Shown here: piece by piece, positions 7,916 to 38,521 of the stretch
Numbering within the stretch: the stretch's first letter is position 1
How the letters are laid out: each line of letters opens with the position of its first letter
NCBI RefSeq assembly: GCF_001194135.2
Contig: NC_068981.1
Location: 19,858,350 to 19,922,349, forward strand
From: Octopus bimaculoides
Lineage: Eukaryota
Direction of reading: 5' to 3'
Length of the DNA: 64,000 nt
The notes under the pieces: generated by a model
Database searches by the model: none
Seen by the model: only the letters and a program-made list of their open reading frames with translations
Told to the model about the DNA's origin: nothing
Made by a program: the position numbers and the translations under genes

Positions 7916-10900
7916 ATTTTAATATAACAAAAAAGAAAGATAAAGCTAATACATGAGATTAGTAATCATTCTGAACTGTTGATGTAATTTCTGAGCAGCA
8001 ACTAGATTATTAAATAGCTGTGCCAAACATTGATTCTTGCTAGCATGTCACAAAAACAGATTTATTTCTGCTACACAGTCAGAATAATAATTAAAAAAAT
8101 GTATTAAAAAAAAAATATTATAAAAAATAGAAAAAAAAGCAGGAATGCACCAGTATACATTAGTGTGTTCCAAACTGCAGATACAATTTTTACTGTTTAC
8201 AATTAAGTGCTGATATTTTGGCAAATATGTAATTTTGTATTATTTTTATTTGTTAAGTACATCGTGTTCACAGTTTTAGCAAACATTGGCTTTCTGTTTG
8301 CTTTCTCTAGCTATTACAGCAAATCTAGTGAACTGTGAATGCTCCCAATGTTTAGAAGAAAGGAAATATATATATATATATGCACATGTGTATACATACA
8401 TGCACTTGCATGTATGTATGTATATATATATATGTATATATATATATCATCAGATACCAATTAGTTACACCTGTCTTAATAAAGCAAGTCTCATTTTGCC
8501 ATATGCTAGGGTTTTCTTTGTTTTTTTTGTAAATTTGTGTAAACCCTTCTCTCCCTATTCAATAAAACTAAATTTCACTTTATGTTTTTTCCCATACCAC
8601 CATGATGGTAGTCACTTCTTTTCAGCTGTAGGCTACTACAAAATAATCAATTTATTTCAATTTATTTTCCTCTTGATTATTTCCTTTTTGATTTTTTTTC
8701 TTTTTTGTTAAGATTCTCGAAAGGTTCACTTATTTCAGCCTGATTTGTTCGATTCCTTCATTAAAGCTGCCAATAAAGCATGAATGGAATTAAATTTTGA
8801 ATATCTGATTTATTGAAGCTAATAATGTTTTCAAAATAATCTATGTAATTTCTGTACAATCTTAGAAAAAACTGAAATTTCCTATTTGATTTCTGTAAAA
8901 TCTTCTGCTTGTGATTAGCGGTAAATAATTGTGTCCATTCTTTGGACTTATATATAGTATAGAAAACATCTTTGGTACAACCTCTAATCTATCCCCAAAA
9001 TGTCATTTGATAGTTGATAAAATATTGTTATATATATGTATGTATACATATAAATATACATATATATATATGTGTGTATTTTTTAGTGTCTGATGTTAGT
9101 TGGACATTATGAAAAAGCAGAGCCTCAATATAATTGTTTGACTTGCAAGAATTAGTGGCCAAATCTTTTTCAGATTACTTCCTCAAATCTCATCAAATCA
9201 CTCCCTATCATTTTACATATGCGTTGTTTATGTTATGTTATATATATATATATGACTAACCTAGCTTTTAATGTCTCTAGTATTGCCAGAAAAAAGGTGC
9301 CAACAAAATACTGAGAAAAATTATAAAAAGACAGACAATATGAGGCATGATAGCTAAGAACATCCAATAATATCACTAAGTAATTTCCTTCAGTGATTTA
9401 TTTTCCAATAATATAGATGCTTTGAAAACAAACTTTATTAATATCACCTGATATTATTGGTTAACTTCACAATAATAACTCCCATCCAAACTACCACTAT
9501 TAACACATGCACTGGTAAGGATTGAATAAAATTGTTAATTTCAAGATTATGAGTTGTTGGAGGTTGGTTAGCTTGACCTACAGCTTTACCAACTATCATA
9601 AGTATAAAAAGTGAGCTAAAAGAAATAACTTAAGTGGGCCAGTGGTATGAATTTAAACAATTCAAGTGGGTGGTAATGCCAAAAATTCTAAATGAAATTA
9701 AATTTGCCTTTTAGTTGGTGAAAAGAAACAAAAATTTGATTGCATTTGTTAGCAACTTTTAAAGAAAAAGGAATATAATTTCAAGAAAATTAGAATTAAT
9801 TTCACAGAGAATTGCTTCAGGTTAATAAACTGGTCGCTGGGATGCATTTCGATCTTATTTAACCTCATCAGTGGGGCATAATCTTCTCAAAACTTTGTTG
9901 GTTAGGTCACACAATTGGCAGATACAAAAAATAGTTTATGAAAAAAACACTGAATGGAAATTGACAGAATTAGTATAATTCCATTTCTCTGATTTTTATA
10001 TCCATTCCTATGAATCGTCAAAGGAAGAGAAGTTACAGTGTTCTACATATCTATCAGATGTTTACCTGATACTCTATATGAAATGTTTACTACAGACTCT
10101 GTATCTTGAATTTATCAGACTCTTTGCCTCAAATGTTTAACAGATACTTGCTGTCACATATCAGATGCTCTGTACCTTGTATTTATCAGATATTCTATAT
10201 CACATCCTGTACCATGTATCTGGCTGTTGCCTTGCAACTGCATGGCTTCACTTTACTACTCTGTGTGATAGGATTGAACTCAGTATCACTACTCAGTACC
10301 TTGAGCAAATATATTCTACTATAGTCTTGAGTTTTAAGTAGGCCAATGATATGAATTTAAACAATTCAAGTAGGTAATGGTGTCGAGTATTACAGGAGAT
10401 GGAAACAATGTGCAAGTAGATTGGCAGGACCATTCACGTTCTTGGAGGATAGGGGTAGACTTAATCAGAAATCTAGTTTAACATGATTATCTGAACATTG
10501 GGTACCTTTTGTGGATCTCACTTGTTGCAAGCATTTTCACTTGGTGTCTGGTCTGAATATAACTTCCTTACTTCCTTCAGTCTTGAAGAAAATAATCATG
10601 GCTGGCTGCCCTTCTTCCTCTGACTAAACCATTAAAAGGATTTATAAACTTGTTAACAGTTCAAATATTCTTGTGACATATTCAAAACCATAAGAAAGAT
10701 ATTTGCTGTTTTTTTGTCATGGAGAAATATTCTTGCTGCAGATGAATAGGTGTAAACATTCCAAAGTCAATTTAAAACTTCCCCTACCTAGATGATGGAT
10801 ACATATAGTTTGGAATAGTTATCTCCTCTTCAGCACTGAACACTGGAAATGAAGTGCTACGGACTGACAACGAAAGACCAATTCTCCCTAATTCTCTCCC

Positions 10901-11413
10901 TTTTATATTTGTACACATCACTGCCTAGCCCTTCTAATCTGTATTAAAAAGAAAATATATCTTATATTTATGAGATACTCTGTACTAAGTATTTATTAAA
11001 TACTCTGTACCACATGTTTATCAAATGCTTCAAGTCAAATTATTAGGAAGTAAAACTTAAATAATAAGAAGGTTCAATTTACTAGATTATTCTCTTGTTT
11101 CAAGTTTGATTTATGTGACCTATCTCACCTTTATGTCAAAACAATAAGAATAATGAGCACACAATGAGTAGAAAGTACTTGTGAGATTTTAAAATACTCA
11201 AATGTTTGAAGCTGTATTAAATATATATGCGTATATCATATATATATATGTATATGCATTCACATATACGTGTGTGTGTGTGTGTGCGCGTGTGTGTGTG
11301 TGTGTACATACACCATATATGTATATACATATACACATTGCATTGCCACATTAATATTTTGCCTGCATTAATGTTATTTACCATCTCTCAGCAACCTTCA
11401 TCTCCACTACTTT

Positions 11414-19779: not shown

Positions 19780-20680
19780 TACTATGAGTACCAAAAAGTA
19801 AAGTCATATTTTCAAGCAAATAATCTGATGTCATTCCACAAATAGTTTAGAAACCAATAAAGGGTATCTTTGCAACCACCCAATCAGCATAAAGTTAATG
19901 ACCAATTGTTAATATGGACACATGCTCTGTGTGTGTGTGTGTGTGATAGTCCATGGGAGACAAGGTTTAGTGTGCTATGTATTCGGCATTGCGTGCTTTA
20001 TGAATTTTATAAGGACAACAAAGCAACATGCAGAAGGGAAAACATATATGTGCATATCCTGATAGTGTAAGTGTTTGGAAATGCCAAAGCTGGTTTAACA
20101 AATTCAAAAATGGTGATTTCAATCTTTTGGAACCACGAAGACCACCTGTTCTCGATAACGACACAGTGAAGACAGCAATTGAAGAGGATCTGTCAAAGTA
20201 TTGGGGACTTATCCTGGAGTTTTAATAAACCTTGGTCCACTGTCAAGGTCATCACTAGCAGACTGAGATCAGTGGATAGAGAAGAAAAGTGGGTACCTCA
20301 TGAGTTGTCCTCTAAGAATAAAGCAGTGTGTTCTATAAGATAAACCAAGAATAGATAAATTCATTAGACTTGAAAGTTCTACCTCACCCTCCCTATTCAC
20401 CAGACCTAGTACCATCAGATTTTCAATTATTCAGGTGACTTGAACACTTTACCAATGGAAAAAAACATTCATGGGCAGGGACAATACTGAAGCAGCACTC
20501 CAAACGCTGTTCTTTTAAAGAACCTGGTTTTTTGGGGTTTTTTGCCCAAGAAATTAGAAAACTGGTTTCAAGGTGGGGAAACAATGGCAATTATATTTGA
20601 ATTAATAAAACTATATATGTTTTATATAGATTTGAAATCATTACATGAAGTGTAACATTACTTTTTGGTACCTCCTAATA
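19780..20680 (+). mobile_element. Mariner (DD34D-type) transposon, internally deleted and frameshifted
   Basis: Terminal inverted repeats share the exact core GTACCAAAAAGTAA (19788-19801 and 20658-20671), and TA follows the right end. Peptide relics include IRHCVLYEF, CQSWFNKFKNGDFNL (HTH), KWVPHEL and LPHPPYSPDLVPSDF. Confidence 0.9.
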
Positions 20681-23380: not shown

Positions 23381-24252
23381 CAGAGGATGGTGAATAAATA
23401 GTTGTTTAAATTACACAAAAATGAAAATAACGCTGACACCTCATTTTAACAGATATATTTACCAAAATGACATAAAAATATCTTGAAATACTAAAGAGTA
23501 AATTTATTCAATAAAATCACTATTGGCTTCAACCAGACAACTTGGGAATCTCTTGCAATTCTTCTGGACAGTTTCCTTGTTTAAGTTGAATGCTGCCATA
23601 ATCTTTGTATTCAGTTCATCTTTGGTGTTAGAAGGAGTTTTGTTGATATCTTATTCAACTGTGCCCAACACATAATAATCAAGGGGTTTGCAGTCTGGGG
23701 AGTTAAGTGGCCCAGATGTTAGGGGTGATGTGGTCGCAGAAATTGTCTGACAGCCATGACTGGGTTCTCCTGCTTGTGCAGCATGGTGCAGAGTCCTGTT
23801 GCCAGACATAGGGTCTTCCAGCAGCCACCCTCTTCACCCAGGGCAGCACTACCTCCTCCAGGCATTTCATGTAGGCCTCCATATTGAATGTGAAGTTGTG
23901 TAGGAAGATGAATGGAGGCATAACGCTGGCATTACTAGTGATTACTCCAATCACCATGATGTTGACTGGATGTTTGATTTTTCTCATTCTCGGTACATGA
24001 CTTCTGTTTGCACTGCCCTCAGATTGACATCCAGACACTTTGAAATGTTCATATTGGGGTCTCCGGTGTGAATGCTAAGCAGTACTGCATGTCATTTCCA
24101 AATTTCTAGCAGAGTGAATTGCGTCATGGTGCTGTTTTTCTCAAAGACGACACCCAACTGACCCTACAATACTGTGCAGTCGACAAAATCAAAATTAAAC
24201 GATGCGCAAAATTAAAAATATAAAATGGTGGCAATTTATTCATCACACCCGG
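23381..24252 (-). mobile_element. Tc1/mariner maT (DD37D)-like transposon, deletion derivative
   Basis: ORF 23703-24038 contains HPVNIMVIGVITS...WQQDSAPC...WLSDNFCDHITPNIW, and the C-terminus DFIE* lies at about 23504. Imperfect TIRs are CAGAGGATGGTGAATAAATAG and the reverse complement of CAATTTATTCATCACACCCGG, with TA next to the right end. Confidence 0.88.
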
Positions 24253-26136
24253 TATACACACACACATATACATACATGTGCATACTCACACACATGCACA
24301 TTCTTACACACACACACACATATTTGACTACATTTTTTTGTCTATTTTATTAAGTAATACAAGTTTTGCTGAAGCAATCTAACACCAGTCTCTTTGGATT
24401 CTGTTTTATCGTAAATTTGTGTGTGGGGTGACTGGCATAGTCAAATGGTTAAGGAGTTAATATTGCAATCATGAGGTCATGGGTTAAATTCCAAAATGCA
24501 AATGTGAGCAAATGTCTTTTACCACAACCTGAAGACAGCACGAAGCCTTGCGAGTGAAAATGAGTTGGTGAAACCTCATTGAAAAAGTGTCAGATGGACA
24601 GTACATAGAATTCATGGCACACAGAGTATTGTACTGATTCCTGCCAAAGTCACCTTTGCTTTTCCTTTCATTCCTTCATTACTGGCCCTGTACCTATATT
24701 AGAAGCAATTATTGGATTTCCACAATCAAACCCAGAACTTGCCTGTGTTGCTGAAGTAGCAAGAAGAGAATCTATATGTAAACCGTTGAGAAAAATCTAC
24801 ATACTTAATATAATAAACCTTTGATGTTAATTACTCAATTATACATCAGCATTTAAAACAATAGTTAATTTAGTGTTAATATATTTAATGTAGAGAAAAA
24901 TGAAAAGTCGTATTAGAAATGTCTATATGATGAAGAAAGTAAACATTATATAAATGTCTAATATATTATTTGAAGCAAGTACAAGAGATAACTCTGGTCA
25001 TCTTTTCATCTTATTAAACCTCCTCAGTGAAGTGTATACACCATGATTCTTACTGAATATAGTGATGAGGAAACACTATTAAGGCCATGGTGTGAGTTAC
25101 TTCCTTGTGATCAAACAAATAAAGGAAAATAAAATGTATCTTCTGCGCAAGTAGGTTTGTAAAAGTGGTTATAGGAAATTTTGTCATAAACATTTTTGCT
25201 GCAGGAAAATTCACTGAAAGAAATTTCATTTTAAATGACCTCGTCATGTTTTTTTAATGTTTGACGTTGAATAATGACTTGCCTATTTAATAATGCTTTT
25301 ATAAAACCTTTTATCAATCTTCTTTTATTTATTTAAAAAAAACTGTTGATAAGCTTTGTGTTATGGCAAATTTTTCTATACGGCAAAATCTCTTACAGCA
25401 AATTTTCCAGACACATGAAAAAGTAACATTCATTCTTTGGTTGTTTGCTTAATACCTGTTTGTTTTTTTTTTATCATTCTTGCATTGACAGGGAGGTATC
25501 TGAAGTAGCATTATATGGTTAGCTATTTTTCTTGTCACAGAATCCTTACCTGATTTTCATGTAACAGATTGTTTTTTTATACCACTGGGGTTCAAAAGCA
25601 CAAAGCAGCTAATCTTAATGCTGACTAGGAATGTAAATATCATGCTACTGCTTTCCTCAGGCATTGACAAGTGAACCCATGAAATTTCCACATTTCTGCA
25701 TATATGCACACACACATGTGCACACATGCATCCATGCACACACATGCACACACACACACACTTGTGTGCATGTGTCTGTTTATATGTGCATGTGTGTGCC
25801 TGTATGTTATTATATGTAATTGATTTACCGCTCTTTTGAAATTTCTGGCTTTGTACCACAATTTGAAACCATTATTATTATAATTCCCCAATTTTAGGAC
25901 TTGTGCTTATAGTAAAAAGGATTATTATTATCAGGCAGAAAAAGAAGGGAAAACAGTCTTGACGTTTTGTATACTAGTCCTTCATCAGAATAAATGAAAA
26001 AAACAGAAGTACAAGAGGTGGTTGGAAAATAAGCTCTTGTATATTATATATACATATATGTGTATATGTATATATGTGTATATGTATATATATACATATG
26101 TATATATATATGTATATGTATATGTATATATGTATC

Positions 26137-27037
26137 AGATGTGGTGTTCAAGAGAGACAACTGTGCTGGTATGGTCATGTGACGAGAATGGATGAGGATA
26201 GCTGTGTGAAAAAGTGCCACACCCTAGTGGTTGAGGGAACCTGTGGAAGNNNNNNNNNNCACACCCTAGTGGTTGAGGGAACCTGTGGAAGAGGTAGACC
26301 CAGGAAGACCTGGGATGAGGTGGTGAAGCACGACCTTTGAACATTAGGCCACTCCGAGGCAATGACTAGTGACCGAGACCTTTGGAAATATGCTGTGCAT
26401 GAGAAGACCCGGCAAGCCAAGTGAGACCATAACCTGTAGCCTTTGCCAGGGTGTAGCCAGCCCACTTATGCATACCTTTCCTTCATTGGACACTAAACTC
26501 TGCTTGCAAAGACGTGTTGGGGCAAGTGANNNNNNNNNNGGACACTAAACTCTGCTTGCAAAGACGTGTTGGGGCAAGTGAAATCGAAATCGTAATTGAA
26601 CCAAATTCGATGACTGGCACCCATGCCAGTGGAGCACTAACGGCACCATCCGAACGTGTTCATTGCCAGCGCAGCTGTCTGGCTTCCATGCCAGTGGCAC
26701 GTAAATAGCACCATTTGAGCGTGATCATTACCAGCATCTCCTTACTGGCACATGAAAAAAACATTCGAGCGAGGTCATTGCCAGTGTCGCTAGACTGGTT
26801 CCTGTGCAGGTTGCACGTAAAAAACACCATTTCAGCGTGACTGTTGCCAGTACTGCTTGACTGGCCCTCATGCCAGTGGCACGTAAAAGCATCCACTACA
26901 CTCTCGGAGTGGTTGGCATTAGGAAGGGTATCCAGCTGTAGAAACTCTGAAAGATCAGTTTGGAGCCTGGTGCAGCCATCTGGTTCGCCAGTCCTCAATC
27001 AAATCGTCCAGCCCATGCTAGCATGGAAAGTGGACAG
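26137..27037 (+). mobile_element. 5'-truncated RTE-clade LINE: ORF2 C-terminus plus long internally repetitive 3' UTR
   Basis: CGVQERQLCWYGHVTRMDEDSCVKKC...GRGRPRKTWDEVVKHDL is the typical RTE C-terminus. The 3' UTR ends in the family tail CCCATGCTAGCATGGAAAGTGGAC. Confidence 0.85.
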
Positions 27038-29040: not shown

Positions 29041-29440
29041 ACTCTTACTCTTTACTCTTTTACTTGTTTCAGTCATTTGACTGCGGCCATGCTGGAGCAC
29101 CGCCTTTAGTCGAGCAAATCGACCCCAGGACTTATTCTTTGTAAGCCTAGTACTTATTCTATCGATCTCTTTTGCTGAACCGCTAAGTTACGGGGACGTA
29201 AACACACCAGCATCGGTTGTCAAGCGATGGTGGGGGTACAAACACAGACACACAAACATATATATATACATATATACGACGGGCTTCTTTCAGTTTCCAT
29301 CTACCAAATCCACTCACAAGGCTTTGGTCGGCCCGAGGCTATAGTAGAAGACACTTGCCCAAGGTGCCACGCAGTGGGACTGAACCCAGAACCATGTGGT
29401 TGGTAAGCAAGCTACTTACCACACAGCCACTCCTACGCCT
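29041..29440 (-). mobile_element. tRNA-derived SINE family A, near full length
   Basis: Minus head AGGCGTAGGAGTGGCTGTGTGGTAAG (A box) ... GGGTTCAGTCCC (B-box-like) ... CCTTGGGCAAGT, with a GAGTA-repeat tail. Partial copies at about 3461-3613, 12135-12240, 29620-29696, 50570-50670, 55057-55215 and 58163-58430. Confidence 0.85.
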
Positions 29441-29710
29441 ATGAATACGTATATGTATTTATATGTATATTATCCCTGTCTCTATCCGCTAGCCACTCTC
29501 CATTCACATTGTTGTAAGCTTATTTATCAATCCACTTACCCTGTTCAATCCTTGGTGCTGCTTACATTCACCTCTCTGTAACTTGAGACTGTCACATCTT
29601 CACTGCCATCTTGTCTGTCTCGAGGCTACAGTAAAAGACACTTGCCCAGTGGGACTGAACCCGGAACCATGTGGTTGGGAAGCAAGCTTCTTACCACTGT
29701 ATCTATAGAT

Positions 29711-29802
29711 AAATATGGAACACTTCACAAATTTGCGTATCATCCTTGCACAGGGGCCATGCTAATCTTCTTTGTATCATTCCAATTTTAGAATATGTAC
29801 TG
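29711..29802 (-). pseudogene. U6: U6 snRNA retropseudogene, 5'-truncated
   Basis: Reverse complement CAGTACATATTCTAAAATTGGAATGATACAAAGAAGATTAGCATGGCCCCTGTGCAAGGATGATACGCAAATTTGTGAAGTGTTCCATATTT aligns to U6 from about nt 14 to the 3' end with 8 substitutions. The ACAGAGA box is mutated to ACAAAGA and the 5' stem-loop is missing. Confidence 0.95.
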
Positions 29803-30004
29803 TATATATATCATCATCATCATCATCATTTAATGTCCATCTTCCATGCTTGCATGGCTTGGATGGTTTGACATGGAGCTGTCAAGCCAGACAGAGGACT
29901 GCACCAAACTCCAGTGTCTGTTTTGGCATTGTTTTATACACATGCATATATGTAGATGTATACATGTGTATATATAAGTATGTATATGTGTGTGTGTGTA
30001 TACG

Positions 30005-30549
30005 AATTATAAATATCATTACAATACAATCGTATTATTTTCCAGCTAAAACTAACACCGTGAAGTTAGAATTATAAATAATAGTGGCACAACAAGGCAC
30101 CAATGTTTGCTGGAAATAGCAGTCAATAACCGTATGACGCTATGTAAAGCTTCACTGAATGTATACAGGCAAAGGTGTATGTGGTTGGCGAACATAAAAA
30201 TTTTCGTCTTACCTCTGGGAAGAACCCTGGATAAATGAACAACCTAGAATAGATAATCTAGTACTCGAGTTTCAGACTTTCCAGAATATGCTCGATATCA
30301 TAAATTTGGTTAGTCTTCTTCAGCTAGGTTCACCAAAGACGAAATTTAAAATATTCGCTACATGAGTGCCTGTATATTCGTCTGATATGTCTAGCCATAA
30401 ACAGAACTGAGATCAGTGAAAAAGTTTCATATAAAAATTATAAATATCATTGCAATACAATAGTATTATTTTCCAGCTAAATAAAGCACCGTAAAGGTAG
30501 AATTATAAATAAGAAATAGTGGTACAACAAGGCACCAATGTTTGCTGGA
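30005..30549 (-). mobile_element. Candidate retrozyme / Penelope-like pseudo-LTR: 431-bp monomer plus about 110-bp partial tandem copy containing the hammerhead
   Basis: 30005-30114 and 30436-30549 are near-identical direct repeats (AATTATAAATATCATT...CACCAATGTTTGCTGGA), period 431. The unique spacer holds the hammerhead, has nested inverted repeats, and is visibly more CpG-rich than the background. Confidence 0.55.
30255..30330 (-). ncRNA. Type I hammerhead ribozyme with intact catalytic core and palindromic minimal stem III
   Basis: Minus strand reads AACCTAG (stem I 5') - CTGAAGA (core) - AGACT..33 nt..AGTCT (5-bp stem II, extended by imperfect CCA/TGG and TATG/CATA pairing) - GAAAC-TCGA-GTA (palindromic ACTCGAGT stem III, GUA cleavage triplet) - CTAGATT (stem I 3', 6 of 7 paired). 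Predicted cut between 30262 and 30261. The 10.1-11.1 pair is A-U rather than the usual G-C. Confidence 0.8.
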
Positions 30550-30688
30550 TTTCAGCTGCATGGAAACTCAGCATTACACTTCTCTGCATTAGATTACTAT
30601 GTGGTCTGATAGCTCTGTTAGAACAACTTTCTGTGATAGGCACATGATTATTTGGATCCATATCTTTTATCACAAATTTACATATACT

Positions 30689-30733
<45 letters not shown>

Positions 30734-31034
30734 CATGCATACACACACACACACACGCACACACACAGAGGCGGATGTTAAATGATGATGATGAAGATAC
30801 ATGTATTTATAATATTAATGCACAATATATGGATTTATTTTACCCAGTGGTACTCACAAAAAAAAAAAACTTCTTTNNNNNNNNNNNNNNNNNNNNNNNN
30901 NNNNNNNNNNNNNNNNNNNNNNNNNNNNNNNNNNNNNNNNNNNNNNNNNNNNNNNNNNNNNNNNNNNNNNNNNNNNNNNNNNNNNNNNNNNNNNNNNNNN
31001 NNNNNNNNNNNNNNNNNNNNNNNNNNNNNNNNNN

Positions 31035-31065
<31 letters not shown>

Positions 31066-31948
31066 TAGACAAAATGAGATAACAAAGCCAAGACTGTGAG
31101 GAGTTTTCAGGACATTTATAAGGAAAAAGATATATAGTCTTACAGTTGTTTCTGGGATATTATGGATATTCCTTCATTAGAGTGTGAGCTGGTTAAATCA
31201 TCATCATCATTATCATCGTTTAACGTCCGCTTTCCATGCTAGCATGGGTTGGACGATTCGACTGAGGACTGGTGAAACCCGATGGCTACACCAGGCTCCA
31301 ATCTGATTTGGCAGAGTTTCTACAGCTGGATGCCCTTCCTAACGCCAAATAGAGGTAAATATATGATTTTGTAATAAGGAATTATTCATATATATATTTA
31401 TGTATTTAGGTATCATCCTCATCATTTAATGTCCGTTTTCCATGCTGTCATGGGTTGGATGGTTTGGTTACTACAACTGTTCTTATCACTTTACAGACTC
31501 TTCTGGGTGTTTTTACATGGCACCATCACCAGTGCTTTTTAAGTGACTAGTGACTGAGACCTTTGGTGATATGCTGTGCATGAGAAGACTTGTCAAGCCA
31601 AGTGATATTATAGTTGTGGCTGACGCTGGTGTCATGTAAGTGGCACCCATGCCGGAAGAATGTAAAAAGCACCTTTTGAGCATTGGGCATCACGTAGGCA
31701 CGTAAAACTCCTTTCAAGTATTGGGCCTCATGGCGGCAATGACCGAAACCTTTGGCATTATGTCGTGCTTGAGAAGAAGACCCATCAAGCAAGTAAGATC
31801 GCAGTCATGGCAGATACTGGTGTTGTGCAAATGGCACCTGTGCCAGAGGCATGTAAAAGCACCCATGCCAAATCAAACTGGCGTCTGGTGCAGCCTTCTA
31901 GCTTGCCAGCCCTGGTCAATGAATGCTAAATGATGATGATGATGATGA

Positions 31949-36480: not shown

Positions 36481-38181
36481 GCACATCCCACTTTACCCTA
36501 AATTCCTCTCCAAGTTGAAATTTTAAAAGTTGATGAGAAAAAGTTAGTCAATAGTTTAACATTTCTGAAATATTCATGTTTTTATACAAATTTCCCTGAA
36601 GCAAAACAGGAACGAATTTTTCATGTTAAATTTCCCAAAAGTGTTTCTTGATCACACAAGAAATATTTATTGATAAAGTTAAAAAATTTGTGCTTTATCT
36701 TTCAGAATATTGTTGTATTCTTGATTCTATCTAAGAATTTTTTTAAAAACTTAGGAATTACAGAATATACTCCAAATGTATGTAAAGGGTCAGTTTATAA
36801 CAAATGAAGACATTTCTAATCAGTTCTAATTTATTTGAAAAATGGCAATCTTCCTTAGACACAGACCACATCCCCACTCTCTCCACACACCATGTAATGT
36901 CATGTTTTTAAGAATCAACAATTAAGAAAAATTTAAATGGACAAGTAAATTAGCTAATTACTTTAGTTGTTTATAATCTATCAACTTCAGTATGATTCTA
37001 ATAGATTGTGACATGTTCTACGCTAATTAGGATGCCACATAATCTATTCATCTATCACAAACGCTTTAAAACCTCCATAGATCAAATCTGTTTCTGTTCT
37101 AAAGTAATCACCTAAATCCCAAACAAATTTCAGAATTTGGTACCATTCTCTGGAATTATGTTGGGTCTAACACCATCATCTTTATTGATTTCTACAAACT
37201 GAATCATAAGACAGGTTTCATCTATGCAAGACTTTATCATATATGACAGGTAAGATCCTGAACAGCAAAATTTATTGTGCATATATGCACTCAACACACA
37301 CAAATACATTAACACACACACACACACATACACATGCTTGCATTCAAATACTTTATACTCTCACATATAGTAACACAAATTCAAAATGCCTTTGGATGAA
37401 CTTCTGTTTGTGGTTATCAGGGCTATTTGAGAAAACGCTTTAACATTAATTTTGATTTGCTCAGCAAAGATGAACCAATAAATGAGCTTCTTTGTAGGCA
37501 CTCAGCTTATTAGAAATAGTGAACAAAATCTTTTCAAATCATACTCCACCATCTTAAAAAAGAATGAAGTAACTTGTTGTATACACCTCCCACTTCTCAG
37601 CTCAGGGTGAAATATCTTTGATCATAGGCTTACTGGAATCACATTAACCTGAGTTTTACCAATAACAACATCAGCTTGGTTTTATAAAAGCACATTGGAA
37701 TCAGTTGATTCATTAGTTGTATAATTCTTCTCTTAGTGGAACTGTTTGGTTAAGCAAATCAGGTTGTTTCAATGTTGTCTTCTAATAAACGTGGCTGCTT
37801 GCAGTTGCTTCTGCTGAAAGAGTATATAGACATAAATATTAAATTATCTAATGTAGATGACAAACTTCATCAAAGCTGCACTAATTCATGTGGATTTGAT
37901 AATTAAAGTTTTTTTATTGTTGTTATTCAAACTGAAGTCTGTCTTGATCAGTTAGACTGTGGTCATAGGTATTCCAGCCATATCCATCCTATCTTTTTTT
38001 TGTAATGTAACATTTCTGGTATTAGTTTATCAGATTTATCCTTCCTATTTAAAAACGATATAATTTGAGAGAGATTTGGTAGTTATTTCTAACTGATCAT
38101 TGCTGGACTTTCCAAAATAAGAAATGGGAAATTACTATTTTCAAATCTCACAACAAGAGATATTCAGCAACAGTACTTTGG

Positions 38182-38521
38182 AGTAAAGATTTTTGCCAAC
38201 ATAACATGGCAGTCCTAGTTTAGGACGAATGTTGCTGTAATTTAGCCCCAGGAAACATCGTCTCCAGCTGGCTATACGACATAATCTATATTTGAAAATA
38301 TAAGGCCTGGTGTAGCCATCTGGTTTCACCAGTCCTCAGTCAAATCGTCCAACCCATGCTAGCATGGAAAGCGGACGTTAAACGACGACGACGGCGACGA
38401 CAACGACGAAGGACACAGATCATGTTGTATAGCCAGCTGGAGATTATGTCTACTGGGGTAAATCACAGCAACATTTGTCCTAAACCAGGACTGCCATGTT
38501 ATTTTGGCAAAAATATTTACT
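38182..38521. mobile_element. Foldback/MITE with about 105-bp inverted arms, carrying an RTE-tail copy between the arms
   Basis: 38182-38288 and 38417-38521 are reverse complements (TTTTTGCCAA.ATAACATGGCAGTCCT.GTTT.AGGAC.AATGTTGCTGT...CTCCAGCTGGCTATAC). Confidence 0.8.

What the first reader, a model, noticed from the sequence alone, without database searches (positions are those of the whole stretch)
30005..30549. Candidate retrozyme: 431-bp partial-tandem unit carrying a type I hammerhead ribozyme with an intact core
Seen in sequence: direct repeats 30005-30114 and 30436-30549 (period 431) bracket a spacer whose minus strand has a full hammerhead core (CUGAAGA, GAAA, GUA site), a 5-bp stem II, a palindromic ACUCGAGU stem III and a stem I paired at 6 of 7 positions. 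Established: Penelope-like elements carry minimal type I hammerheads with palindromic stem III in partially tandem pseudo-LTRs, and metazoan non-LTR retrozymes are tandem monomers of a few hundred nt that self-cleave and circularise. Inference: this is a non-coding, self-cleaving mobile RNA unit that may yield an approximately 431-nt monomer or circRNA. No gene annotation would flag it.
Basis: partly seen in the sequence, partly recalled or inferred. Interest (0 to 1): 0.85.

Follow-up and report, generated by a model that had tools for sequence, protein, structure and literature searches.

The report
Decayed hammerhead-ribozyme retroelement relic
A 551-bp stretch of a probably octopus genome is most likely an old, partly duplicated copy of a small non-coding mobile element carrying one hammerhead self-cleaving RNA motif, a known kind of element that cannot release an RNA circle from this copy.

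Summary
Direct repeats 29999-30114 and 30430-30549 are 87.5% identical (E 5e-38). They bracket a spacer whose minus strand carries a complete type I hammerhead at 30330-30255, with an intact core, a GUA site and a palindromic helix III.

The motif beats chance. My descriptor finds 1 hit against 0.003-0.03 expected per window. Rfam Hammerhead_1 scores 24.3 bits over the full model in a narrow scan. That is below the 34-bit gathering score and invisible in the standard scans. Two chance look-alikes got no hit.

The 431-nt unit also folds as a rod with the hammerhead at its tip (z about -4; 2 of 60 background windows match this).

The best reading is an old, solitary 1.27-unit insertion of a hammerhead-bearing non-autonomous retroelement, either a metazoan non-LTR retrozyme or a Penelope-derived element.

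Three limits apply:
- There is one ribozyme and one cleavage site, so this locus cannot release a 431-nt monomer or circle.
- The weak helix III implies cleavage as a dimer.
- The 10.1-11.1 pair is A-U, not G-C.

No RT lies nearby and no second copy is in the window. The source genome could not be searched, so family membership is untested. This is a new member of a known kind, of modest interest.

The parts
30430..30549 (-). Upstream partial copy (repeat A'), read on the hammerhead strand. It is the 5'-truncated extra 0.27 unit.
   Evidence: 87.5% identical to 29999-30114 over 120 columns, E 4.7e-38.
30115..30429 (-). Unique part of the unit (spacer). It carries the rod arms and the hammerhead domain.
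   Evidence: No second copy in the window. The 431-nt unit has MFE -107.8 kcal/mol, z -4.0.
29999..30114 (-). Repeat A, the 3' part of the full unit. It holds small hairpins (UUCCAGC/GCUGGAA, UGGUGC/GUGCCA).
30255..30330 (-). Type I hammerhead motif with all three helices and the full core.
   Evidence: Own descriptor gives one hit in the window against 0.003-0.03 expected by chance. Rfam RF00163 scores 24.3 bits over the full model, below the gathering score of 34.
30317..30323 (-). Core box CUGAAGA (C3 to A9).
   Evidence: Read directly.
30274..30316 (-). Helix II: AGACU/AGUCU (5 bp, with A10.1-U11.1), plus a 33-nt distal part predicted to extend it (CCA/UGG, UAUG/CAUA, 8-nt loop).
30263..30273 (-). 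GAAA box followed by the palindromic helix III, ACUCGAGU. In cis this gives 2 bp plus a UCGA tetraloop. In a dimer it gives 8 intermolecular bp.
   Evidence: the cofold of two copies is -38.5 against 2 x -13.9 kcal/mol.
30261..30262 (-). Predicted cleavage site, 3' of A17 (GUA|C).
   Evidence: Inferred from hammerhead numbering applied. Not assayed.
30326..30421 (-). 5' arm of the long imperfect rod.
   Evidence: Pairs with 30150-30227 through 51 bp in 8 helices.
30150..30227 (-). 3' arm of the rod.
   Evidence: The plus strand also folds well, z -3.3 in the tool's own run and -2.7 in the re-run with 20 shuffles.
29987..29998 (.). (TG)6 microsatellite abutting the element's 3' end. A possible insertion target.
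   Evidence: About 5% of the window lies within 10 nt of such arrays, so this is weak support.

Best explanation
This is an old, inactive, solitary insertion of 1.27 units (about 551 bp, 29999-30549, read on the minus strand). The element is a small non-coding retroelement that carries a hammerhead ribozyme. The kind is known: metazoan non-LTR retrozymes, thought to be non-autonomous derivatives of Penelope-like elements.

Inferred life cycle of the family: tandem copies are transcribed, and two hammerheads pair through their palindromic helix III to form a double hammerhead. [quoted passage not shown] A host tRNA ligase closes it into a rod-like circle. A Penelope-type reverse transcriptase then copies the circle for more than one turn and inserts the cDNA, often at microsatellites. 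That produces exactly this kind of circularly permuted partial tandem, whose ends do not coincide with the cleavage site.

Shown here: the repeat, the motif, the rod fold and the preference for a dimer.

Inferred: the RNA-mediated origin, cleavage itself, and the existence of a family.

This particular copy has one ribozyme and one cleavage site. A transcript could at most be cut once, probably only with a partner RNA in trans, and it cannot give a monomer or a circle.
For: - The direct repeat is real, at 87.5% identity and E 5e-38.
- All core nucleotides and all three helices are present.
- The descriptor hit is 30- to 300-fold above the shuffle expectation.
- Rfam Hammerhead_1 scores 24.3 bits over the whole model. 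Rescaling its E-value gives about 4e-5 per 64 kb for that one family. Helix II is not even scored by the model, so its 5 flush base pairs are additional evidence.
- Chance look-alikes score nothing.
- The unit folds with z about -4. Only 2 of 60 background windows do as well. The hammerhead sits at the tip of a 51-bp rod. This matches the 'highly self-paired' circles with a freely folding hammerhead described in PMC7229834.
- The double-hammerhead cofold is about 11 kcal/mol better than two monomers. This fits the dimer-dependent type I hammerheads with a 1-2 bp helix III and a palindromic loop (PMC4209133, PMC7229834).
- GC is 35%, and the 431-bp unit lies within published retrozyme ranges (PMC7229834; bioRxiv 10.64898/2026.07.22.740005, which also describes solitary monomer copies).
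- One end abuts (TG)n. Microsatellite bias is reported for Penelope-like elements (PMC8557442).
- Cephalopod genomes carry Hammerhead_1 loci and Penelope elements: 235 hammerhead loci are reported in the giant squid (PMC6962438).
Against: - The Rfam score is below the gathering threshold, and nothing is reported by the standard scans.
- The 10.1-11.1 pair is A-U rather than the strongly conserved G-C, and no loop 1 / loop 2 tertiary motif is recognisable.
- The 86-nt hammerhead region is no more stable than shuffles (z -0.36). The hammerhead fold (-9.7) is not the minimum-energy fold (-13.9).
- In the full unit, the helix I strands prefer other partners.
- There is only one ribozyme and no second copy of the unit in 64 kb.
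- No relatives were found in JGI metagenomes or the protein collection.
- No RT or GIY-YIG lies nearby.
- The rod folds on both strands, so it is equally a DNA-level inverted repeat.
- Family membership and activity are untested.
Confidence: 0.6

Rival explanations
1. It is the 3'-terminal piece of a heavily 5'-truncated autonomous Penelope-like element, with its pseudo-LTR (a partial tandem made at insertion), rather than a dedicated non-autonomous retrozyme.
For: Penelope-like insertions are typically strongly 5'-truncated and preceded by a partial copy. They carry their hammerhead in the pseudo-LTR near the 3' end and favour microsatellites (PMC8557442, PMC4209133). The layout here, partial copy then full unit on the hammerhead strand with a (TG)n flank, fits.
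Against: No RT or GIY-YIG remnant was found in ORF pieces of 45 aa or more within 5 kb, and no RT motifs by pattern anywhere in the window. The hallmarks of the metazoan Penelope minimal hammerhead are absent: no bulged nucleotide after A9, no G10.1-C11.1, and helix I is not short. The unit's rod-like self-pairing is described for retrozyme circles, not for Penelope UTRs.
Confidence: 0.2
2. The hammerhead-like motif is a chance match inside an unrelated local duplication or an old foldback/MITE-like inverted repeat. Nothing is or was self-cleaving.
For: The score is below Rfam's gathering score. 10.1-11.1 is A-U. The hammerhead region has an ordinary folding energy. The rod folds on both strands, and 3-7% of background windows fold comparably. 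The arms end in CTTCACTGA / TCAGTGAAA, which could be read as terminal inverted repeats.
Against: Expected chance hits are 0.003-0.03 per window. The Rfam score omits helix II, which adds 5 flush pairs. Look-alike strings score nothing. Finding a complete hammerhead exactly at the apex of a rod, inside a partial tandem of retrozyme size, is a conjunction that chance does not readily give. Real hammerhead loci in cephalopods number in the hundreds (PMC6962438).
Confidence: 0.15
3. The direct repeat is an assembly artefact (collapsed or duplicated haplotypes in a gapped draft).
For: The window is a draft with 13 runs of N. One of them (30877-31034) lies about 330 bp away.
Against: The two copies differ at 12.5% of positions and by indels. 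That is far more than haplotype or read-error divergence, and no gap lies inside 29999-30549.
Confidence: 0.03

Closest known systems
Metazoan non-LTR retrozymes (Cervera & de la Pena 2020, PMC7229834; Li et al. 2026 preprint 10.64898/2026.07.22.740005)
   Same: A type I hammerhead with a 1-2 bp helix III capped by a palindromic tetraloop. A unit of a few hundred nt, low GC, no ORF, a highly self-paired predicted RNA with the hammerhead free at one end, and a head-to-tail repeat layout. Solitary 'monomer' copies are described.
   Different: Only 1.27 units and a single ribozyme. Helix II is long and interrupted (5+3+4 bp) instead of 4 bp plus loop 2. 10.1-11.1 is A-U. At 431 nt the unit is slightly above the 170-400 nt range given in 2020. 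No evidence of copy number, expression or circles. Not reported for cephalopods in the papers I could search.
Minimal hammerheads in pseudo-LTRs of Penelope-like elements (Cervera & de la Pena 2014, PMC4209133)
   Same: A partial-tandem (pseudo-LTR-like) arrangement, palindromic 15.2-16.2 / loop 3 implying action as a dimer, a longer than usual helix II, mostly solitary genomic copies, and association with microsatellites.
   Different: No RT/GIY-YIG ORF nearby. [quoted passage not shown] No G10.1-C11.1. Helix I is 6-7 bp rather than 4-5.
Newt/salamander satellite 2 and axolotl HHR_Amex1 hammerheads (dimer-dependent type I)
   Same: [quoted passage not shown] The double-hammerhead conformation is favoured. 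The Rfam Hammerhead_1 consensus aligns over helix I, the core and helix III.
   Different: Those occur in long tandem arrays with conserved loop 1 / loop 2 contacts. Here there is one copy and no recognisable loop-loop motif.

Membership tests
Hammerhead ribozyme, type I (Rfam RF00163) | Conserved core CUGANGA ... GAAA, an A15.1-U16.1 pair, and H17 not G | tested here: met
   CUGAAGA at 30323-30317, GAAA at 30273-30270, and A-U closing helix III, with GUA at 30264-30262.
Hammerhead ribozyme, type I (Rfam RF00163) | Three helices around the core, with helix I open-ended | tested here: met
   Helix I is paired at 6 of 7 positions. Helix II has 5 bp plus an extension. Helix III has 2 bp plus a tetraloop in cis.
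Hammerhead ribozyme, type I (Rfam RF00163) | Score at or above the curated gathering threshold (34 bits) | tested here: not met
   24.3 bits in a 106-nt scan. No hit in the gathering or 801-nt scans.
Hammerhead ribozyme, type I (Rfam RF00163) | G10.1-C11.1 pair at the base of helix II | tested here: not met
   A10.1 (30316) pairs with U11.1 (30274).
Hammerhead ribozyme, type I (Rfam RF00163) | Site-specific self-cleavage | not testable with these tools
   Needs in vitro transcription of monomer and dimer constructs.
Metazoan non-LTR retrozyme | Tandem array of at least 2 units, each with a hammerhead, so that a unit is flanked by two cleavage sites | tested here: not met
   There are 1.27 units. 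The repeated 115-120 nt excludes the ribozyme, and there is one hammerhead only.
Metazoan non-LTR retrozyme | Non-coding unit of a few hundred nt with low GC (<45%) | tested here: met
   431-bp period, 34.6% GC, ORFs of 47 aa or less. The whole window is about 32% GC, so GC does not discriminate.
Metazoan non-LTR retrozyme | Highly self-paired (rod or branched) unit RNA | tested here: met
   z -4.0 and -3.9, with 2 of 60 background windows as extreme. A 51-bp rod. The circle fold is 57% paired.
Metazoan non-LTR retrozyme | Multi-copy dispersed family in the genome | not testable with these tools
   None in the 64-kb window. The source genome is not in any searchable collection. Metagenome and protein look-ups were empty.
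Metazoan non-LTR retrozyme | Expression as linear and circular RNA of unit length | not testable with these tools
   Needs RNA data.
Penelope-like element (pseudo-LTR with minimal hammerhead) | RT plus GIY-YIG ORF between or next to the repeats | tested here: not met
   No Pfam hit in ORF pieces of 45 aa or more across 25.5-35.5 kb. No RT or GIY motifs by pattern in the window. Badly decayed ORFs could be missed.
Penelope-like element (pseudo-LTR with minimal hammerhead) | [quoted passage not shown] | tested here: not met
   Helix II starts flush after A9 with an A-U pair.
Penelope-like element (pseudo-LTR with minimal hammerhead) | Palindromic 15.2-16.2 / loop 3, and a partial-tandem insertion | tested here: met
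   ACUCGAGU palindrome. A partial copy lies upstream of the full unit on the hammerhead strand.

The most novel reading that the evidence does not exclude
The locus is a fossil of a cephalopod retrozyme family that has not been described. Its hammerhead has a long three-segment helix II and an A10.1-U11.1 pair, and works as a double hammerhead. Intact tandem members elsewhere in the genome still produce rod-like circRNAs of about 430 nt in octopus tissues.
Probability: 0.3. Interest if true: 0.45.

Novelty: new member of a known kind. Interest (0 to 1): 0.3.

Why it matters
If a family stands behind this copy, ribozyme-made circRNAs and their presumed Penelope-driven mobilisation would extend to cephalopods. 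Cephalopod genomes are known for massive repeat expansion. It would also add a hammerhead variant (A-U at 10.1-11.1, long interrupted helix II) that curated models miss at their default thresholds. That second point is a practical warning: standard Rfam annotation under-counts such elements. The locus on its own is a dead copy and has no evident function.

Tried and rejected
1. Rfam at gathering threshold over the whole window found only a U6-like RNA. An 801-nt E-value scan found only microsatellite-driven miRNA look-alikes at 29932-30004, which I reject as low-complexity artefacts. Only a 106-nt scan recovered the hammerhead.

2. A self-BLAST of the unit against the window found no further copy.

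3. An exact look-up of 10 window ORFs in the protein collection found none. A homology search with the longest reading frame of the unit found no candidate.

4. Two metagenome scans. The 21-mer from the repeat gave 0 hits. The core plus helix III pattern gave 4 loci, representing 2 distinct sequences. All have about 50% GC and lack helices I and II, so they are chance matches. I then used them as negative controls.

5. Six-frame Pfam and motif searches for a Penelope RT or endonuclease were negative.

6. I tested whether the 141 nt between the unit and the right-hand (TG)n (30550-30690) belongs to a further upstream copy. It shows no similarity to the spacer.

7. Sigma-70 promoter and intrinsic-terminator scans do not apply to a eukaryote. 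tRNA search found none.

8. An assembly artefact is rejected because of the 12.5% divergence between copies.

9. I looked for a host gene in the window, to fetch the same locus from another assembly. No convincing exon was found among ORF pieces.

Full report
**Context**

The window is a gapped draft of an AT-rich eukaryotic genome, about 32% GC with 13 runs of N. It is crowded with TG/TA microsatellites and SINE-like repeats. A mariner-like ORF at 23706-24038 (-) has its best database relative in Octopus bimaculoides, at 65% identity. The SINE sequences also look octopod to me, but that is memory and was not tested. I treat the source as an octopod or close relative.

**The observation**

The direct repeat is real. 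Positions 29999-30114 and 30430-30549 align over 120 columns at 87.5% identity (E 4.7e-38), with a 4-nt indel among its gaps that shifts the period from 431 to 435.

On the minus strand the spacer contains, in order:
- AACCUAG
- CUGAAGA
- AGACU, then 33 nt, then AGUCU
- GAAA
- CUCGAG
- U, A
- CUAGAUU

These run from 30330 to 30255. This is a complete type I hammerhead. All core nucleotides are present, along with A15.1-U16.1 and a GUA triplet whose cut falls between 30262 and 30261. Helix I pairs at 6 of 7 positions and helix II has 5 bp. Helix III is only 2 bp plus a UCGA tetraloop in cis, but the 8-nt palindrome ACUCGAGU can pair between two molecules.

**Is it more than chance?**

Three lines of evidence say yes.

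First, a structural descriptor I wrote finds exactly this one site on both strands of the window. The descriptor requires the core, at least 4 flush pairs in helix II with a loop of 40 nt or less, at least 2 pairs in helix III, and at least 5-6 of 7 pairs in helix I. In 300 dinucleotide-preserving shuffles it finds 0.003-0.03 sites per window.

Second, Rfam. Nothing appears at gathering threshold or in an 801-nt E-value scan, because the speed filters drop it. A 106-nt scan returns Hammerhead_1 (RF00163) over the whole model (1-45) at 24.3 bits, E 3e-4 for that search across 4227 families. The gathering score is 34, so it fails the curated membership cut-off. Rescaled by me to the single family, the E-value corresponds to about 4e-5 per 64-kb window and about 2 per 2.7-Gb genome. 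The model treats helix II as a 43-nt local insertion, so the 5 flush pairs there are extra evidence that the score does not count.

Third, negative controls. A scan of JGI metagenomes for CTGAAGA, then 30-55 nt, then CTGAAACTCGAGTAC gave two distinct chance matches without helices. In scans of identical size, neither gets any hammerhead hit.

Against this, the giant squid genome is reported to hold 235 Hammerhead_1 loci (PMC6962438). Real hammerhead-derived sequences should therefore greatly outnumber chance hits of this quality in a cephalopod genome.

The 431-nt unit is unusually self-complementary. The minus strand folds at -107.8 kcal/mol against -87.2 +/- 5.1 for shuffles, z -4.0. The plus strand gives z -3.3. 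Among 60 random 431-nt windows from the same 64 kb, only 2 reach z <= -3.9.

The fold is a long imperfect rod. Positions 30421-30326 pair with 30150-30227 through 51 bp in eight helices. The hammerhead domain sits at one tip and the repeat-A hairpins at the other. This holds for both the linear and the circular fold, and the circle is 57% paired. It matches the published description of metazoan retrozyme circles as small, low-GC, highly self-paired RNAs that leave the hammerhead free to fold (PMC7229834).

**How the ribozyme would work**

On its own the 86-nt hammerhead region is not unusually stable (z -0.36). The hammerhead-constrained fold (-9.7 kcal/mol) is worse than the minimum-energy fold (-13.9). 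Two copies cofold at -38.5 kcal/mol into a classical double hammerhead, with an 8-bp intermolecular helix III and helix I strands exchanged. That is about 11 kcal/mol better than two monomers.

This is the behaviour described for newt and axolotl hammerheads and for Penelope-associated hammerheads, which cleave poorly as single motifs and better as dimers (PMC4209133, PMC7229834). I therefore infer dimer-dependent cleavage.

Deviations that may lower activity:
- A10.1-U11.1 replaces the strongly conserved G-C.
- No loop 1 / loop 2 contact motif is recognisable.
- Within the full unit, both helix I strands have competing partners (GAACCU with GGGUUC, and CUAGA with UCUAG).

**What the locus is**

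The layout on the hammerhead strand is a partial copy (A'), then a full unit (spacer with hammerhead, then A). The element's ends do not coincide with the cleavage site, so the copy is circularly permuted relative to a self-cleaved monomer.

This is what more-than-unit-length reverse transcription of a circular or multimeric RNA would give, as proposed for retrozymes and Penelope-like elements (PMC4209133, PMC7229834). It is also the pseudo-LTR pattern of Penelope-type insertions (PMC8557442). The 3' end abuts a (TG)6 array. Only about 5% of the window lies that close to such arrays, and Penelope-like elements favour microsatellites (PMC8557442). This is weak support.

No RT or GIY-YIG remnant is detectable within 5 kb or by motif anywhere in the window. 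The hammerhead lacks the Penelope minimal-hammerhead hallmarks. I therefore favour a non-autonomous retrozyme-type element over a truncated autonomous Penelope element, but I cannot exclude the latter.

The two repeat copies differ by 12.5%, so the insertion is old. That also rules out an assembly duplication.

The repeat does not include the ribozyme. The locus has one hammerhead and one cleavage site. It cannot release a 431-nt monomer or a circle, because that needs two sites. With a dimer-dependent ribozyme, even the single cut would need a partner RNA from another locus. The locus is best seen as a fossil that points to a family, not as a working circRNA gene.

**What could not be done**

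The decisive test is whether hammerhead-bearing paralogues or tandem arrays exist elsewhere in the genome, with covariation in helices I and II. This was out of reach, because none of the searchable DNA collections holds this genome. The attempts through metagenomes and the protein collection came back empty.

I found no paper reporting retrozymes in cephalopods. Only automated Hammerhead_1 counts exist (PMC6962438).

**Verdict**

This is a new member of a known kind and most likely a dead copy. Interest is modest. The most useful general lesson is that curated hammerhead models with default filters miss such variants.

Noticed in passing
window 29709-29811 (-): A full-length U6 snRNA-like sequence (Rfam U6, 93.8 bits, E 7e-23). 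The ACAGAGA box is mutated to ACAAAGA and the 5' stem is not conserved. On the same strand it is directly followed by a 5'-truncated tRNA-derived SINE (29700 down to about 29620) and directly preceded by the (GAT)n end of another SINE. It looks like a U6 retropseudogene or a U6-SINE chimera of the template-switching kind, not a functional U6 gene.
   Followed up: partly
window 23703-24038 (-); also 20013-20222 (+) and about 27000 (+): Mariner/Tc1-like transposase fragments. The 111-aa ORF has its best relative in Octopus bimaculoides (LOC128250757, 65% identity), and one relative carries PF13358. This is the only pointer to the source organism.
   Followed up: partly
window 29803-29870, 31193-31260, 31399-31466 (+), and inverted at 30773-30798: At least four copies of one SINE-like repeat that starts with (ATC)n TTTAA[CT]GTCC. 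Two copies of a tRNA-derived SINE head lie at 29372-29422 and 29647-29697. ARAGORN calls no tRNA there.
   Followed up: no
window 29932-30004 (+/-): Sub-threshold Rfam matches to several miRNA families (mir-297 at 40.6 bits against a gathering score of 90, and others) fall on a TA/TG low-complexity palindrome. They are almost certainly spurious.
   Followed up: yes
window about 8304-8734 (+), 10870-11307 (+), 37914-38344 (+): Other 431-nt windows with folding z-scores of -3.3 to -4.3 in the background sample. These may be inverted repeats or palindromic microsatellites. Not examined.
   Followed up: no
window 43556-43783 (+) and about 25500-26300: ORF pieces that by eye resemble non-LTR (LINE) reverse-transcriptase N-terminal and C-terminal regions. 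The piece in the 25.5-35.5 kb batch gave no Pfam hit, and the 43.5-kb piece was not scanned.
   Followed up: no
window 30877-31034 and 12 other N runs: Assembly gaps. The nearest lies about 330 bp from the element, so anything further upstream on the hammerhead strand (for example more units) could be hidden only beyond the 141 nt of unique sequence and the (TG)n/(CA)n array.
   Followed up: partly
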